From Intoshia linei (Eukaryota > Animalia > Orthonectida): 50,583 nucleotides of DNA. Position numbers and translations under genes: made by a program. The DNA is taken from NCBI GenBank assembly GCA_001642005.1, contig LWCA01000120.1, positions 1-50,583 of the forward strand. Reading direction: 5' to 3'. Position 1 is the stretch's first letter. Every line of letters starts with the position of its first letter. Under the pieces are notes generated by a model, which ran no database searches, was not told where the DNA came from, and saw only the letters and a list, made by a program, of their open reading frames with translations. Positions 21,704-36,249 of the stretch are shown one piece after another.

Positions 21704-22112
21704 ATAAATATTCGTCATTCGTCTTTTTATCTACATGTAGTCGCATATTTTTCATTTCAAACCTAGTCAACATTTCATTTTTACATTTTATATTATTGTA
21801 GTTTATCTGATTAACAAATTTTGATAAAATCAATTACAGTAAGAAAGATTACTGTCAAAGTAATTAAAATTCAACGATTTACCTGTTTAAAGAAATCAAA
21901 GGTACAATTAACTGTTTAAAATAAAATTAAAAAATTTTAATAATAAAAGAATGTGTATTAACAAATATTAATTGTTTCAATTCAATATTTTTTTAAATCG
22001 ATTTGACTGTTATTGTAAAATTCAAGTGAAAATGAAATTTGAATATATTATGCGTGTCAAATTAAATTTTTTTAAATTTTAACCATTTAAGTCAATGATA
22101 TTACTGTATATT

Positions 22113-22263
22113 TAATTTACGACTGCAGTATCCGAGATGATCATATAGCTCTCGGGCCAGATATCGTTATTATATTGCACACAGTTTTAAAGGCATCTGC
22201 AACATTGCATTGGCTTTGTTGAGCAAAGAATTTGTTATGGTTGGGTAGCGTTTGCGCACCCCT
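22113..22263 (+). ncRNA. U1 snRNA with a divergent 5' end
   Basis: SL1 CCGAGA/TCTCGG with loop TGATCATATAG (U1-70K-like); SL2 CAGAT/ATCTG with ATTGCAC (U1A site); SL3 CAACA/TGTTG; Sm-like site AATTTGT; SL4 GGGTAGCG-TTTG-CGCACCC; order and spacing match U1. Confidence 0.85.
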
Positions 22264-22301
22264 TAATCAATAAATAAAAGATTTTATTATTATTAGTTTA
22301 A

Positions 22302-23963: not shown

Positions 23964-23999
23964 TAAGTATATTAATTTGAAATTTAAAAATTGCGTAGC

Positions 24000-24741
24000 A
24001 ATAAAAAAAATTCCGAAGGAATGAATTATATAGATTTTCACCCATATTTCTTTATTGAAAATGTGCAATGCACAATTTTTTTGAAATTGTAGGATAAATA
24101 TTTACATTTTTATTTTAATTAAAAGATTAAAAATTATTTTTCATCGGGAATTCGTAGATTTCTCGGGTTGAATTTTTGTAATTATGTCAACTGGAATAAG
24201 CTCTATCAGTATAATCTTCTTTTAATTTCCGCACCGTTAATTATTTTATATTTTTTGTTTTAATAAAATATTTGGGAAAAAACTTATATGAATACTAAAA
24301 TGCTTTTTTGACCGTGAAGTCGTCACTTATTCCGATTGAAATTTTTTATGTGTGTTAACAGGATACAACTGTACCACCCGTAAATCTTTTGAAATTCTAG
24401 GGCTGTTTCATTAAAAAAAGAAGGGTAATTTGGGGTTTTAACCCTGAAGATATAATTTTTTAACTTTAAATTTATGGTAATTTTTATGATTTTAAAATCA
24501 GTATTAGCGTATATATTTTTTTTAAATTTTCCAACTTGTTTGATTTTCAAAAAGAGGGACAACTCGGGTTTTTGACCTGTAAGATGTGAGTTTTGGAGGT
24601 TGAAATTATGTTTGCGAACACCCCAGAGAAAAGTGTAATGTGAAATGTGAACTTTATAAAGTTCTAAGACGGGTAGTTATTGAAATAAACGGCAACACAC
24701 TCACAAATAAATATTGCATAGCATATTATATAAGTAAGGAT
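24000..24741 (-). mobile_element. Helitron family copy, 5' part
   Basis: Reverse complement starts ATCCTTACTTATATAATATGC; similar to 27650-28113. Confidence 0.7.
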
Positions 24742-24924
24742 ATACACTTTTTCAACTTTCAATAACTAATATTATTCATTCGTTTAATTTGCAATTTTGT
24801 CAACTTGTTTAGTTAAATTTAAATTTAAATTTTTTTGTATTAAAATTATCACAAATAGAAATGGTACATTTGTTTTTGTTACATTATATATTTGTACTTG
24901 GATACAGATAGTAAATAATAACGT

Positions 24925-30900: not shown

Positions 30901-33900
30901 TTCAAAAATATTATTTTTGATAATAATTATATTATACATAATAATTTAATTATTAATAATAAGTATTATAATTGAATGGAACTATCTTAGCGGATAAACA
31001 AAACAACACTGAAAGCCAAGCTGAAGCAGCAATTAAACTTTCTATTGAAATTAAAGAAAGTTTATGCAATATTATAGCTAAATCTTCATCTAATGGTAAA
31101 TTTTGTAAATTTTATTTAATTTGCAATAATAATTTTAGGATACAAATTTAAAATATTTATTTATTATTTTAGTGGACAACATCAAAATTTTCCACGAGTT
31201 TGAAATTGATAAAACATTGCTAAATATGCTGAATTCGGATAATTGGAATATAATACACCCTAGTTGTCAAACATTAGGTGTGATGGCCACAAGTTCAATA
31301 TGTCGAGAGTCTATATTTAAATATGGTAATATATATTTTAGTCAATATGTAATAACAATAAGTTATGATTAATTATTTAATATTAATTTTTTAGATGGAC
31401 TTGAAGTAATTATTAAATTGCTAAAAAATGATCATTCTCAGGTTAGACAATCAGCGACGTTGTGTTTGGCAAATTTGATTTTTGAAAATACAACAAATGC
31501 AAAGTAATTTATATAAATGTATATTTGTATTTAAAAATTAAAAAATTCTAATATTGTTTAATAAATCAAATGAATCCTGAGTCAGGCAAAGACAGCTTAA
31601 ACCTTACAGGTTAACACCTTTAAGCTGTCTTTGAGTTAGGATTCCTGATATGAGGTATACAGTATATCTGTAAATTTGTATAAGTGCCACCATTGATACG
31701 GTTTTTTAATTTTTTTTAAGCTTTGTCTATGAAAAAATTACCCATGAAAAATTATTTTTAATTGTTGTTTAAAGAAGCAGAATACTATATAACCTGAATA
31801 CTATAACTATATAAAAATGTATCTCGTGCTAGATCAGGGTGTCAGACTCAATTTGCTTGGCTGGCCAAATGTGAAAAAATATTATCACACAAAAAGATCT
31901 TTACTTAAAACATCATGTTAAAACTAACGGTTTTAATTAATTTATAATAATTTAAATTCATAAAATAAAATAAAAAACAATAATAATGGAGTAAGTGTAC
32001 AAATAATGTTAAAATTGTAATCTTGTTATAAAAATAAAAATTTATATTATAACGCCGCACATTCCACAAGTCCGCATAATTGACACCCCTGTACTAGATG
32101 AATACTGAACGTAATGTATATTATTAAATATTAATTTTTTAGTGAATTAAACAAATCTAGTATTATTGATAGCATAAATTCGATATTACAGGAATCTCGT
32201 GACAATTCTGTCATTAACGCTTCAATATTACTTAGAAATATGGCTTCGGCTAGTGCCACTATTAAATCGGATTGCATTAAAGCAGGTTGTGTCAAAGCTA
32301 TGCTGGAATCAATAAAAACCAATGCTAAGTAATTATTACTACCCACTATAGCTATAATTGTGAACCTGTACAAAATATAAATATAAACGAAACTGATACT
32401 TTTATTCGGATGTATACTATTTCACTTTCCAAACTTGCTAAAACCTCAATCCGTGGAAAAATTTTAATGTTGATATTTGAAATTATTTTAATTTATTATT
32501 TTATTTTATGAACCGTTGCACCAAACTACATGTAATTACATTTTAGTGGGATTATAATGCTGACTGAATTAATGAAGACTTTATCCTGCTACTTAACTGA
32601 TTGTGATGCTAGAAAAATTGTAATTATGCAATTATATTTAAATTTAAAATTTTAATCATACCGGCAATTAATTTTTGTCGTACTTGTTTAAATACAAACA
32701 TGACAAATTCATTACACAATGTGTAGTAACTTGTTTTTTTTAACTACGTGCAAACTGTGAAATAGCACTACCAATGGCGGACACTTCTAGATATATTTTT
32801 TAACTTTATATTATAAATTCAAACAAATTTAATTAAAATTTGAAAATGTAATAATTAATTTGAAAAATTAGTTAAATGGAAGTATTATTTTTGACTATTT
32901 TTTAGTGTTAAATGTGAATAATTCATCTTGATTAACATGTAATATTCAAAATTGTATTTTTGACCTGAAGGTCTCAATTTCTGAGAATAATTCTTGACAA
33001 ATTGTATTCAAAATTGGATTTTTTAATTCATAGGCCTTTAACTTTTTAATTTTATGGTATATATACATTGCATTGACATTCAATTTTATATAAGTAAAGG
33101 AAATTTTAGTTCGATGACTGCAATGGATCAAGTATTTTGGAAAATTGCTTGAATTTGAATGATATCAATTTGATCAGATATACATCTCAAGCTTTGACTG
33201 TAGCTTGTAATAATGAATCAATTGTGGAAAAATTAGTTAGTAGTGGGTATATTTTATTAAACTCACGTATATGTTACTCATTATTTACATTTCAAGGTAA
33301 GGTTTGGATGTATTTAGTCCCAATAAATTTCATCCATCGGGATATTTACATCATTCATTCATAAATCCGATTTTAATATTTTTGGTTGTGTAATGAGTTA
33401 TGATTATTTTAAACTATTTTTTCCGTTTTCCACCATAAAATGTTTTTAATGATATTTTATTAATTTTTTTGATAAATTTTATTGTTTCTTTAGATTTTTA
33501 ATAACTAGCCCTTGTCGCTTTTTTAAATAAAAACCAATTGGCCTGACTTAACATTAACTTCGGTAATAATTTGATATTTTAACAACCTATACACTAAAAT
33601 TGTAGATAATTTTAATTTAGAGTATTATCAAAATTGATTAGTATTTACAAATCTAAAAGTCGCACAAATATTCATACAAAATTAGCCATCGATCGTATTT
33701 TTAATTTCAATTTAACTGTTAAATTTGCTTATTTGGATAAATTGGGTATTTTGTTCAATATTATGATTAAAAAAAGGTACAACTATGTATAACTCAAATT
33801 TAGAAGAAACAGATATTGTAACTGGATTATTTGTTGATGTTGGACGGGTGCGTTCTTTGAATGATAAAGTAAAAACTTTGAATGAACTTGCTGAGGAGGA

Positions 33901-35660
33901 GGTTAATCACAAAAAACCTATAATTTTAATAAACCCTGACAATGAATTGTAATTTTATATTTTACATATATTTTTTAAATATAGATGTACAGATAATTAT
34001 TTTGAGGTACATGAGTTTTATCTAGAAATTACAATAAATTGTTTATTAAGGTATAGTTTTTTAACCTACATGCGAAATTTTTTTTTCACTTCTTCTGTTT
34101 TATTATAAGTATCGTAAGAAAATTCAATTTCATAAAATTAATTATATTTTTTTATATACCGCTGATTTTATTATTTGAATTAAAATTGCAAATACATGGT
34201 ACAAGTAAATATAAAAATTTTTAGATTGAATAAAATTTTAAACATGAACGAAGAGGAAGCTATGAAATTTATTTGTAATTTTAAAATATTAATTCAGGTA
34301 CTCAATCATATTTAGCTGATAATAAAAAAGAAGTGGAACTAATGGACATTTCATCTTTTGATTTAAGATTAACCAGTTATATTGAACATGTTATGAGAAA
34401 CATTCAGCCACTACCTACTTTATTGGACCAAGTTGAAGCATTAGCCATGTAATTTATTAAGTACACAAATATGAAGGAAAAAATTTAATATACTTCAGTT
34501 TCTTAAAGATTTATAATAACCGAATCCCTTAAAATAAAATTTTATTGGTCAAATAATTTCCTTCAAACATTTTTAACGGTGCAATTTTTCAATAACTTAT
34601 TGTTATTTATTTAGGTTTGTCTCTAAATCAATGGGAGGGTTTGTCCAATCATTATCTATAAAAGATTGTAAATATCAATTAAACTTGAGTGAACTTCGAA
34701 ATTCTTTAAATACAAATGTTATACCAATTGGACTAATTTTTAAAGGCCTTCAAGATTATCGAGCTGTACTCTTTAAGGTATTAATTCTTTTTTAATTAGT
34801 ATGTTTATGACATGTATCATAGCCATTATCAACCTTTTTCATGCTTGAACGTTTTTATTTTTTTCTCATCGGTTGATCCGAAATTTATTGGCTCTCAGTT
34901 TTTTGATATCTGCAACATTAGTAGATAATTAGATTAAATTTCATTTTAGTAAGTAATATAAGTATTATTATATTGTAAGATAAACGTTATAAGTGGTATT
35001 TTTTCACGTGAAATACCATAAGTTGTTTATAGCACGTGTATTTGATTCTTCGCATTCCACAATATGGATATATTAGATATATCTAAGATTAACAGCTATT
35101 ATTTGTTTGTGAATAAATCGAGTTTCGAATCTAATGTTACAAAAAAATATTAAAAAAAAATTGAATCAACAAAATTATTTTAAAATAAAATTAAAAGATT
35201 GTCAATTGACTCAATTACGATCCTGGGTGAGTCTGAATATTACTCATCGTATACAATATAAAATATAAAAAATTTATTTAGATTTTGGCTGACAGATTGG
35301 GAATTAGTTGTACATTAGAAAGAGGAAAATATAATAATTATTGGAATACATTAACAGTCATATTACCGGAAGGCCAAAAAACCAGCTCTCAACGTCGTGT
35401 ATGTTATTAAAATTACATTTAAACATCCTTTGATAATTTTTATCAAGGTTAAAATATTAAATGGCCGAAATGACACTATAAAACCTTCATTGGGTCTCCT
35501 GCTTTATATTGTGTATATTAAATATAATAATACATGTTATGTAATATTATATGTTTAGAAAAAAATGTTTACCAAAGATTGTATCGTGGATCTAGTGTTT
35601 CATGTCGGAAGATTAATGGATGTAACGACGACAGAAGCCATTAAATACAAATCATTTTAA
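24925..35660 (+). CDS. ARMC3: Armadillo repeat-containing protein 3 (ARM repeats + C-terminal EDR1-like domain)
   Basis: MAKKTKK..DV|FDPVTLESSQSATVVLLLNSKEEEVV, HENRTIRRN, SSDPDVSKNAVE, RAVLFK|ILADRLGISCTLERG, IVDLVFHVGRLM..EAIKYKSF* match recalled ARMC3; more than 20 GT-AG exons; TAA at 35658-35660. Confidence 0.95.
26409..26918. mobile_element. hAT-type non-autonomous element
   Basis: CAGTGGTTCC left end, degenerate right end, flanked by TTCTACA duplication. Confidence 0.55.
27348..28113 (-). mobile_element. Complete non-autonomous Helitron (~766 bp) in an ARMC3 intron
   Basis: On the minus strand A|TCCTTAC...TGTTTGTCTGT...GC hairpin GCCCTCGGCAGAGC...CTAG|T; no TSD. Confidence 0.82.
31835..32091. 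mobile_element. hAT MITE, inverted copy of 20204-20532
   Basis: TIRs CAGGGTGTCA/TGACACCCCTG; TSD TGCTAGAT/TACTAGAT. Confidence 0.85.
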
Positions 35661-36249
35661 CCTTCATTTTGATAATATACATAAAAAATCCAAAATTTAT
35701 CAACTCTTAATTAAACATTACATATAAACTTTTAATTTCAAAGTGATAACTTATAAAAATACAAATATGAATGGACTCAATCCATTGGATTTGCTAATAA
35801 TTAACAAATATTTCCACAAAACTACAGAGTTGTTAGATATAAAGTAAATTCTTCATTTAAAAAAGATCATTTTGAAATTTGTGTTTTCGATGTGTGCAGT
35901 TGTTATTTTTGCTGAAATACAGTTGTACAATTGCAAGAGTTGAAAATGTGTATTTTAGTTATAATTCGTTTAAATTTAAATTTAGTTTGAATTTAATTTA
36001 AAATTTTATGAGTCAGGATATCAAACTTTACCCTTCTTGTACCCAAATCAGTCCGTATATATATTCCCTTGGTATGTTGGTGTGGCCCTGTAAATTTAAA
36101 TTTTTTTTCAAATTAATGAAATCAATGCAATATCCCGATTCGTCACTAAGAATAAACAAATTTAAAAGAATTTTTTAGCAACAGTTAAAGCAAATTTTTA
36201 CTGCTGCAGGGTTATAATTGAAAAATTGGCATCCATAGATTAAATAAAA

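What the first reader, a model, noticed from the sequence alone, without database searches (positions are those of the whole stretch)
22113..22263. U1 snRNA with a rewritten 5' splice-site recognition arm
Seen: all U1 body elements are present (SL1 with a 70K-like loop, SL2 with ATTGCAC, SL3, Sm-like site, SL4), but the 5' arm reads (T)AATTTACGACT. Established: ATACTTACCTG is near-invariant, with C4 pairing G+5 and CUG pairing exonic CAG. Inference: this arm would read GTAAATT, dropping both the G+5 pair and the exonic AG pairing. It may be a spliceosome adapted to AT-rich donors or a specialised variant U1. Stems still pair despite sequence divergence, which argues against simple decay.
Basis: partly seen in the sequence, partly recalled or inferred. 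Interest (0 to 1): 0.85.

Follow-up and report, generated by a model that had tools for sequence, protein, structure and literature searches.

The report
Variant U1 snRNA gene, altered arm
This is a real, well-preserved gene for a divergent U1 splicing RNA whose splice-site-reading end has been changed. It is one of eight such variant genes that sit beside three normal U1 genes in a tiny, AT-rich animal genome, but whether it is expressed could not be tested.

Summary
Window 22114-22263 (+) encodes a U1-like RNA with helix H, four stem-loops, a GAUCA-type SL1 loop, the AUUGCAC SL2 loop and an AAUUUGU Sm site. Its 5' arm reads AAUUUACGACU, not ACUUACCUG. Rfam U1 scores 36.9 bits, below the 69.5 cut-off (E 1.9e-7).

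It is not a rewritten sole U1. The genome (41.6 Mb; an earlier scan note calls it Intoshia linei) has 12 full-length U1-like genes:
- Three are canonical and one has arm AAUUACCU.
- A separate clade of eight shares AAUUUAC: B, D and six type C copies. The window copy is type C.

Stems are kept by compensatory changes. Type C coding regions diverge 2-4 times more slowly than their flanks.

The window copy lies closest to the type C consensus and carries no damaging change. It has the upstream motif found before U1 and U4 genes, a distal motif at -260 specific to its clade, and a 3' box. Several siblings are visibly decaying.

The exon-side GACU matches no common donor class.

Best reading (0.5): a transcribable variant U1 gene reading A/U-rich donors. 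Main rival (0.3): a recently silenced copy.

The scan's first readers had already noted sister U1 variants elsewhere in this genome.

The parts
21770..22295 (+). The roughly 520-bp duplicated unit: about 340 bp upstream, the gene and its 3' box. It is shared with the other type C loci.
   Evidence: blastn of the window against the other loci. Homology to C2162, C3240, C1887 and C429 copies begins near 21770 and ends near 22290.
21853..21867 (+). Distal upstream element TGTCAAAGTAATTAA, at -261 to -247 (candidate enhancer or DSE). It is specific to the B/C/D clade.
   Evidence: The motif lies at -246 to -261 in type C copies, at -259 in B (1 mismatch) and at -257 in D (2 mismatches). It is absent before canonical U1, V, U2, U4 and U5 genes. 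With up to 1 mismatch there are 6 hits on both strands of 306 kb, and 5 of them are at this position.
22040..22054 (+). Proximal sequence element (PSE)-like motif TGAATATATTATGCG. Its core starts 71 nt before the predicted first base.
   Evidence: This is the only exact GAATAWATTATG in the 50.6-kb window. In all fetched loci, every exact match is a U1 or U4 promoter site; one of them (C2162a) is now separated from its gene by an insertion. The distance to +1 equals that of U4 and canonical U1. Type C has T where the others have A at one position.
22085..22091 (+). Second upstream box ATTTAAG, at -29 to -23 (PSEB-like by position).
   Evidence: Similar A/T-rich TTTAAG or TAAG boxes lie at the same distance before canonical and variant U1 copies. 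This is a weak motif in AT-rich DNA, so it is inferred.
22114..22263 (+). Predicted variant U1 snRNA (type C), about 150 nt.
   Evidence: Rfam U1 match at 36.9 bits. The family model R1 gives 161.4 bits, though the window copy was part of the model. The start is set by the PSE distance. The 3' end is set by the end of SL4 and the 3' box. Neither end has been mapped experimentally.
22114..22123 (+). Single-stranded 5' arm AAUUUACGAC. U22124 already pairs in helix H.
   Evidence: The same arm is found in 4 of 6 type C copies, and D has AAUUUACGAU.
22124..22126 (+). Helix H, 5' strand (UGC). It pairs with 22223-22225 (GCA); the fourth pair is a C.A mismatch here.
   Evidence: Pair 11-117 is U-A in the B/C/D clade and A-U in the canonical clade.
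22128..22158 (+). Stem-loop 1, with loop UGAUCAUAUAGC at 22138-22149 (U1-70K-type loop).
   Evidence: Six to seven pairs are kept, and 7 of 8 pairs show double changes across the family.
22159..22198 (+). Stem-loop 2, with the AUUGCAC loop at 22174-22180 (U1A-type loop).
   Evidence: The outer helix CAGAU/AUCUG covaries with B. The inner helix has two U.U mismatches that are U-A pairs in D.
22200..22221 (+). Stem-loop 3.
22229..22235 (+). Sm site AAUUUGU.
   Evidence: It aligns to the Rfam AAUUUGUGG block.
22243..22261 (+). Stem-loop 4, GGGUAGCG-UUUG-CGCACCC.
   Evidence: The loop is UUUG here and UUCG in all other copies.
22269..22285 (+). 3' box-like signal, AATAAATAAAAGATTTT.
   Evidence: Similar AAT(T)AA..A(T)AGA(T)T blocks lie 5-20 nt after U1, U2, U4 and U5 genes of this genome.

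Best explanation
Window 22114-22263 is the best-preserved member ('type C') of an old, second subfamily of U1 snRNA genes in this genome.

How it would work:
- It has the layout of a Pol II snRNA gene: a distal element at -260, a PSE at -74 to -60, a box at -29 to -23, and a 3' box.
- It would give a roughly 150-nt Sm-class RNA that folds as U1 and keeps the loops that bind U1-70K and U1A.
- Its free 5' end is AAUUUACGAC instead of ACUUACCUG.

The most likely role (inferred) is as an alternative U1 snRNP. Its intron-side bases AAUUUAC would pair with A/U-rich donors of the form GUAAAUU. It would work beside canonical U1 and the other arm variants (AAUUACCU, AAUUUACUUUU, AAUUUACGAUU) in a genome whose donors have largely lost +5 G. 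The exon-side GAC(U) matches no common donor class, so this type is either specialised or uses only the intron side.

Shown: gene anatomy, family structure, structural and sequence constraint, promoter-motif conservation.
Inferred: transcription, snRNP assembly and target class.
For: 1. U1 identity. Rfam U1 matches full length with E 1.9e-7. All body motifs are present.
2. Family size. There are 12 full-length U1-like genes and no more at the depth searched. They form two clades with 100/100 support, and the window copy has the shortest end branch among the type C copies.
3. Structure kept by compensation. 21 of 37 pairs have double changes; 87.8% of cells are paired against 32-47% in slid controls. 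Window copy against D: 6 pairs changed on both sides and kept, and only 1 lost.
4. Sequence constraint. Type C genes differ by 5-9% and their flanks by 12-27%, with Fisher p from 0.02 to 7e-8 in all six pairs.
5. Promoter. The exact PSE motif occurs once in the window, at the right place. In the loci, every exact match is a U1 or U4 promoter site, and the spacing to +1 is the same 71 nt as for U4. A 15-nt element at about -260 is conserved across B, C and D although their flanks are otherwise unalignable. The 3' box resembles those of U2, U4 and U5.
6. State of this copy. Its 3 private substitutions all fall in unpaired positions and none hits a known motif.
7. Donor context. In ab initio donors, +5 G appears in 1 of 24 and 2 of 46, and +4 to +7 are A/U-rich. 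First-reader notes s1-779317 and s1-787776 report the same; they are unchecked AI notes.
Against: - No expression data.
- Three canonical U1 genes exist, so nothing requires this RNA.
- Five of the six other type C copies, counting the C429 fragment, are visibly damaged; the sixth has a broken stem pair and a changed arm. The family is therefore partly dying.
- On end branches alone the gene-to-flank substitution ratio is only about 0.35-0.68, from small counts. Recent loss of function of this copy cannot be excluded.
- Gene conversion limited to the coding part could mimic constraint.
- The exon side of the arm fits predicted donors no better than decoys, and perfect targets are not enriched.
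- Helix H has only 3 pairs.
- The type C PSE differs from the U1/U4 consensus at one position.
- The Rfam score is below the family cut-off.
- My donor set is small and noisy.
Confidence: 0.5

Rival explanations
1. This is a silent or recently silenced copy (a pseudogene in the making). The B/C/D subfamily was functional in the past, but the type C burst of duplicates is now decaying. The window copy simply has had the least time or luck to collect damage.
For: Most type C siblings carry disabling changes:
- AUUGCAC loop lost in three copies.
- Sm site hit in one.
- An SL4 pair broken in one.
- One copy cut off from its promoter by a roughly 455-bp inverted-repeat insertion.
- One copy internally deleted.

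The pair C1887/C3240x shows no excess conservation of gene over flank: gene 92%, flanks 88-97%. Canonical U1 genes are present. No RNA holder was found. [quoted passage not shown]
Against: - The window copy has no disabling change, and its three private changes avoid all pairs and motifs.
- The PSE, the distal element and the 3' box are intact.
- Gene-to-flank divergence is significantly low in all pairs that include the window copy.
- The clade kept its fold through many compensatory changes, so at least one member per type must have been functional for a long time. For type C, this is the best candidate.
Confidence: 0.3
2. This is an expressed U1-like snRNA whose job is not general 5' splice-site recognition. 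Examples would be regulation of a few specific transcripts, suppression of premature polyadenylation at particular sites, or a stage- or sex-specific form of U1 snRNP.
For: - The exon-side GACU does not fit the donors I could predict, and there is no excess of perfect targets.
- The B/C/D clade has its own distal upstream element, absent from canonical U1 genes. This suggests separate regulation.
- Human vU1.8 affects gene expression without clear splicing effects (PMC3561869).
Against: - The GUA-reading core UAC and the whole U1 protein-binding body are kept, which is what a splice-site reader needs.
- The arms of V, B, C and D all change towards A/U at the +4 to +6 reading positions, in step with the donor drift of the genome.
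- No candidate alternative target was found.
Confidence: 0.15
3. It is not a U1 relative at all: a chance match in AT-rich DNA, or another snRNA such as U11.
For: The Rfam score is below the gathering cut-off. The single-sequence fold is no better than shuffles.
Against: - It aligns full length with a graded series of paralogues up to canonical U1 at 88.7 bits.
- Covariation supports the U1 fold.
- It shares the U1/U4 promoter motif.
- A separate, good U11 gene exists at C2444:52372-52513, with 80.5 bits.
- The arm is not complementary to U12-type donors.
Confidence: 0.02

Closest known systems
Human variant U1 (vU1) snRNA genes (O'Reilly et al. 2013, PMC3561869; Wong et al. 2024, PMC10870369; Mabin et al. 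2021, PMC8457000)
   Same: Both are paralogues of U1 with their own PSE/DSE-type promoters and 3' boxes. Many have base changes in the 5' splice-site recognition motif (52% of the human vU1s, per PMC3561869). In both cases they coexist with canonical U1 and with dead copies.
   Different: - Here the variants form an old, deeply split clade (about 0.58 changes per site between clades). It has many compensatory stem changes and its own distal promoter element. Most human variants, by contrast, are recent near-copies.
- The variants outnumber the canonical genes, 9 to 3.
- The genome's donors appear to have drifted away from the canonical arm.
- Expression and snRNP assembly are shown for the human variants but not here.
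Co-evolved U1 arms in Entamoeba (AACAAAC), Mastigamoeba (ACGUAC) and Physarum (ACAUAC beside standard copies) (Roy and Bowser, bioRxiv 10.1101/2022.06.08.495308)
   Same: The U1 pairing region is changed in a lineage with atypical donor sites. According to that preprint, Physarum carries both standard and modified U1 copies, as this genome does.
   Different: - In Entamoeba a single U1 matches a nearly universal donor perfectly. Here there are several arm classes, degenerate donors and no perfect match on the exon side.
- This is an animal.
- The match between arm and donors is only partly shown here.
Developmentally regulated U1 isoforms of animals (mouse U1b, Xenopus and sea urchin embryonic U1, insect U1 isoforms). 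This comparison is recalled from my own knowledge, not checked here.
   Same: Multiple U1 gene classes with different promoters in one genome.
   Different: As far as I recall, those isoforms keep the ACUUACCUG arm and differ in the body. Here the arm itself differs.
U11 snRNA (Rfam RF00548, same clan as U1)
   Same: An Sm-class, four-stem 5' splice-site reader with a non-U1 arm.
   Different: A separate U11 gene exists in this genome. The window RNA keeps the U1-type AUUGCAC loop, and its arm cannot pair with AUAUCCUU-type donors.

Membership tests
U1 spliceosomal snRNA (Rfam RF00003) | Covariance-model score at or above the curated gathering score (69.5 bits) | tested here: not met
   36.9 bits, E 1.9e-7 locally. 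No hit at gathering level. Canonical copies of the same genome score 83.7-88.7 bits.
U1 spliceosomal snRNA (Rfam RF00003) | Helix H plus four stem-loops in U1 order, supported by comparison | tested here: met
   33 of 37 model pairs form in the window copy. The family-wide covariation score is 0.421 against 0.05-0.19 for slid controls.
U1 spliceosomal snRNA (Rfam RF00003) | SL1 loop of the U1-70K type (GAUCACGAAG in human) | tested here: inconclusive
   The loop is UGAUCAUAUAGC. GAUCA and the final AG are kept and the middle differs. It is close to this genome's canonical C2786 loop, GAUCAUUAAG. Binding is not testable here.
U1 spliceosomal snRNA (Rfam RF00003) | SL2 loop AUUGCAC (U1A site) | tested here: met
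   Present at 22174-22180 and identical to the canonical copies.
U1 spliceosomal snRNA (Rfam RF00003) | Sm site between SL3/helix H and SL4 | tested here: met
   AAUUUGU at 22229-22235.
U1 spliceosomal snRNA (Rfam RF00003) | 5' arm ACUUACCUG complementary to CAG|GUAAGU | tested here: not met
   The arm is AAUUUACGAC(U). Only UUAC is shared.
U1 spliceosomal snRNA (Rfam RF00003) | Pol II snRNA gene signals: PSE at a fixed distance, and a 3' box | tested here: met
   The PSE motif is shared with U1 and U4 genes at the same 71-nt spacing. The 3' box resembles those of U2, U4 and U5. This rests on motif comparison only, not on function.
U1 spliceosomal snRNA (Rfam RF00003) | Expressed, TMG-capped, assembled with Sm and U1 proteins, and bound to 5' splice sites | not testable with these tools
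Variant U1 (vU1-type) gene | A U1 paralogue with its own promoter and a changed recognition motif, beside canonical U1 genes | tested here: met
snRNA pseudogene | Loss of promoter or 3' box, broken stems or motifs, truncation, or retro-copy marks | tested here: not met
   None of these applies to the window copy. Homology extends 340 bp upstream, so it is a DNA-level duplicate and not a retro-copy. Several siblings do meet this definition.
U11 snRNA (RF00548) | Best hit to the U11 model, and an arm complementary to U12-type donors | tested here: not met
   U11 is found elsewhere at 80.5 bits; none of the U1-like loci is hit. Clan competition in cmscan kept U1.

The most novel reading that the evidence does not exclude
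This compact animal genome runs a multi-U1 system. As its donor sites lost +5 G and became A/U-rich and degenerate, U1 split into at least four arm classes: ACUUACCUG, AAUUACCU, AAUUUACUUUU and AAUUUACGAYU. These sit in two old gene clades with different distal promoter elements. Each would read a different subset of donors, or act in different stages of the parasite's life cycle. The window gene would be the working copy of one class. That would be a division of labour in 5' splice-site recognition not described for any animal.
Probability: 0.25. Interest if true: 0.85.

Novelty: new variant of a known kind. Interest (0 to 1): 0.6.

Why it matters
The U1 5' end is among the most conserved RNA sequences in eukaryotes. 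Lineages with odd donor sites usually keep it unchanged; Entamoeba, Mastigamoeba and perhaps Physarum are the reported exceptions.

Here an animal with eroded donor sites keeps canonical U1 genes. It also maintains a second, old U1 clade with a different arm, under structural constraint and with its own promoter element. If these RNAs are expressed, the system would make testable two questions: how splice-site recognition co-evolves with degenerating splice signals, and whether several U1 species can share the work.

If they are not expressed, this is a tidy example of birth and death in an snRNA gene family.

Tried and rejected
- Default Rfam scan of the window: no hit. The variant only appears with E-value thresholds.
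Loci could no longer be cut out. Promoters of U11 and other snRNAs therefore could not be compared, and the donor analysis stayed at 306 kb.
- Ab initio intron finding:
  - The first EM run drifted to GC-rich false introns and was discarded.
  - A composition-aware run was still noisy.
  - Only the codon-filtered sets were used, and only as weak evidence.
- Test for dedicated targets. The perfect 11-nt complement of the arm is not enriched: 48 non-self sites against 98 for the reversed control.
- Idea that the U1 unit travels with the repeat at window 23974-24745: rejected. That repeat is everywhere in the sample.
- U11 identity: rejected.
- Single-sequence folding energy gives no support, z +0.45.
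- Literature. No paper in the library links this species to U1 variants or gives its donor consensus.

Full report
**What is there.** The window is AT-rich, about 25% G+C. At 22113-22265 (+), Rfam U1 (RF00003) aligns over its full length with 36.9 bits and E 1.9e-7 in a 1.2-kb search. This is below the curated cut-off of 69.5, so the default scan reports nothing. The sequence shows:
- helix H
- SL1 with loop UGAUCAUAUAGC
- SL2 with AUUGCAC
- SL3
- an AAUUUGU Sm site
- SL4

The 5' end reads (U)AAUUUACGACU where U1 normally has AUACUUACCUG.

**The genome and the family.** The assembly is 41.6 Mb in 3,520 contigs. An earlier follow-up note of this scan names it Intoshia linei, an orthonectid. I did not verify the name. 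The size and base composition fit what I recall of the published genome, and short introns (median 57 bp) are reported for that species (PMC6543705).

Rfam U1, BLAST with the window copy and a family-specific covariance model (R1) together find 12 full-length U1-like genes. By predicted 5' arm they are:

| Class | Arm | Locations |
|---|---|---|
| Canonical (3) | ACUUACCUG | C2786, C1710, C504; 83.7-88.7 bits |
| V (1) | AAUUACCU-AA | C2786 |
| B (1) | AAUUUACUUUU | C2162 |
| D (1) | AAUUUACGAUU | C3240 |
| C (6) | AAUUUACGACU or near | window, C1887, C2162 x2, C3240 x2 |

There is also an internally deleted fragment on C429. A maximum-likelihood tree splits the genes into two clades with 100/100 support: canonical plus V, and B plus D plus C. 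About 0.58 changes per site separate the clades. The window copy has the shortest end branch among the type C copies. A good U11 gene lies elsewhere, so these are not U11.

**Is it decay?**
- At family level, no. On the 12-copy alignment with the U1 cloverleaf, 87.8% of pair cells are standard pairs, against 32-47% when the partners are slid. 21 of 37 pairs changed on both sides, and no shuffle of 500 reaches the observed covariation.
- Between the window copy and D (77% identical, nearly the same arm), six pairs changed on both sides and stayed paired, and only one was lost. Against B the count is seven. The clade with the new arm therefore evolved for a long time under selection for the U1 fold.
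- Among type C copies, the RNA-coding part differs by 5-9% and the alignable flanks by 12-27%. This is significant in all six pairs tested, with Fisher p from 0.02 to 7e-8. That points to constraint, or to conversion limited to the gene.
- The type C family is nonetheless partly dying:
  - Three copies have lost the AUUGCAC loop.
  - One has a hit in the Sm site.
  - One has a broken SL4 pair and a changed arm.
  - One is separated from its promoter by a roughly 455-bp insertion with inverted ends.
  - One is internally deleted.
- The window copy is the closest to the type C consensus. Its three private substitutions (22163, 22212, 22253) all lie in unpaired positions outside known motifs.

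**Gene signals.**
- A motif GAATA(A/T)ATTATG lies upstream of canonical and variant U1 genes and of the single U4 gene. In the window it occurs exactly once, at 22041-22052. In about 300 kb of other loci, every exact match is a U1 or U4 promoter site.
- The core of the motif starts 71 nt before the first A of U4, of canonical U1 (ACUUACC...) and of the window copy (A22114). This sets the predicted start and suggests that all U1s of this genome lack the usual leading AU.
- A TTTAAG-like box sits near -26.
- A 3' box-like AAT..AAAAGATTTT follows the gene, as after U2, U4 and U5.
- A 15-nt element TGTCAAAGTAATTAA lies at about -260 in the B, C and D genes (0-2 mismatches) but not before canonical U1, V, U2, U4 or U5. 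With up to one mismatch it has six hits in 612 kb of both strands, and five of them are at that position. So the variant clade has its own conserved distal element.
- The duplicated unit is about 520 bp and includes 340 bp of upstream sequence. These are DNA-level gene duplicates, not retro-copies.

**What would the arm read?** By complementarity, AAUUUAC pairs with GUAAAUU, and GACU pairs with AGUC before the GU. I therefore predicted introns from long open segments filtered by codon usage.

The sets are small and noisy (24 and 46 donors), but they agree with each other:
- +5 G occurs in 1 of 24 and 2 of 46.
- +3 is A or U.
- +4 to +7 are A/U-rich.
- GUAAUU is the commonest hexamer.
- C is the rarest letter at -1.

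Two first-reader notes report the same erosion (s1-779317, s1-787776).

The intron side of the variant arms thus moves in the direction of the donors. The exon side of type C fits donors no better than random GT sites. Perfect 11-nt targets are not enriched in the genome: 48 against 98 for the control. Type B (UUUU) fits the common A-rich exon ends better than type C does.

**What could not be done.** Expression is untested. The sequence is held by DNA-type runs and by one run of unknown kind. I sent nothing from that stretch to any search tool afterwards.

**Verdict.**
- The most likely reading (0.5) is a transcription-competent variant U1 gene, the best-kept copy of its type, giving a U1 snRNP with an A/U-reading arm beside canonical U1.
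- A recently silenced copy is the main rival (0.3).
- A non-splicing or stage-specific role is possible (0.15).

Compared with known cases (human vU1 genes, PMC3561869 and PMC10870369; co-evolved U1 arms in Entamoeba, Mastigamoeba and Physarum, bioRxiv 10.1101/2022.06.08.495308), this is a new variant of a known kind. It is of real interest if expression is shown.

First readers of this scan had already noted the sister loci (s1-780911, s1-784649, s1-780953, s1-780954).

Noticed in passing
L008:3482-3936 (= C2162 about 31481-31935, minus strand): A roughly 455-bp insertion with terminal inverted repeats (CAGTCGGACTCGTCAATAA...TTATTGACGAGTTAGACTG), apparently flanked by TA. It sits between the type C promoter and the coding part of copy C2162a. 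It looks like a MITE-type element that inactivated that copy.
   Followed up: partly
window 23974-24745: A highly repeated interspersed element with dozens of partial copies at 70-90% identity in 306 kb of sampled genome. It is not specifically linked to the U1 loci.
   Followed up: partly
L017:1379-1583 (C429 about 35478-35682): A type C U1 copy that keeps its promoter, the first roughly 44 nt and the last roughly 16 nt, but lacks the middle roughly 90 nt (window 22158-22247). It is a truncated pseudogene.
   Followed up: partly
L002:1501-1658 and L003:1501-1658 (C1710, C504): Two of the three canonical-arm U1 genes have an SL1 loop AGGACAAGAGG in place of the GAUCA-type loop kept by the third canonical gene and by all variants. 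The U1-70K site may be remodelled in the copies with the standard arm.
   Followed up: no
all U1 loci; window 22113-22115: By PSE spacing, all U1 genes of this genome start at ACUUACC or AAUU. That means they lack the AU dinucleotide that is highly conserved at the U1 5' end and is said to favour cap-binding-complex binding (PMC5766165). This is only predicted; the 5' ends are not mapped.
   Followed up: no
L018-L024 (U2, U5 and U4 loci): The sharp PSE motif GTGAATAAATTATGC is shared by U1 and U4 genes. The three U2 and three U5 genes show only loose A/T-rich resemblances at that distance. All share the 3' box-like AAT(T)AA..ATAGA.
   Followed up: partly
306 kb sample (window plus loci): Predicted donors are degenerate: +5 G is nearly absent, many are GTT donors, TAG acceptors are frequent, and introns go down to about 35 nt. 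This comes from ab initio prediction only.
   Followed up: partly
Nothing from it was searched afterwards, and its content was not examined.
   Followed up: no
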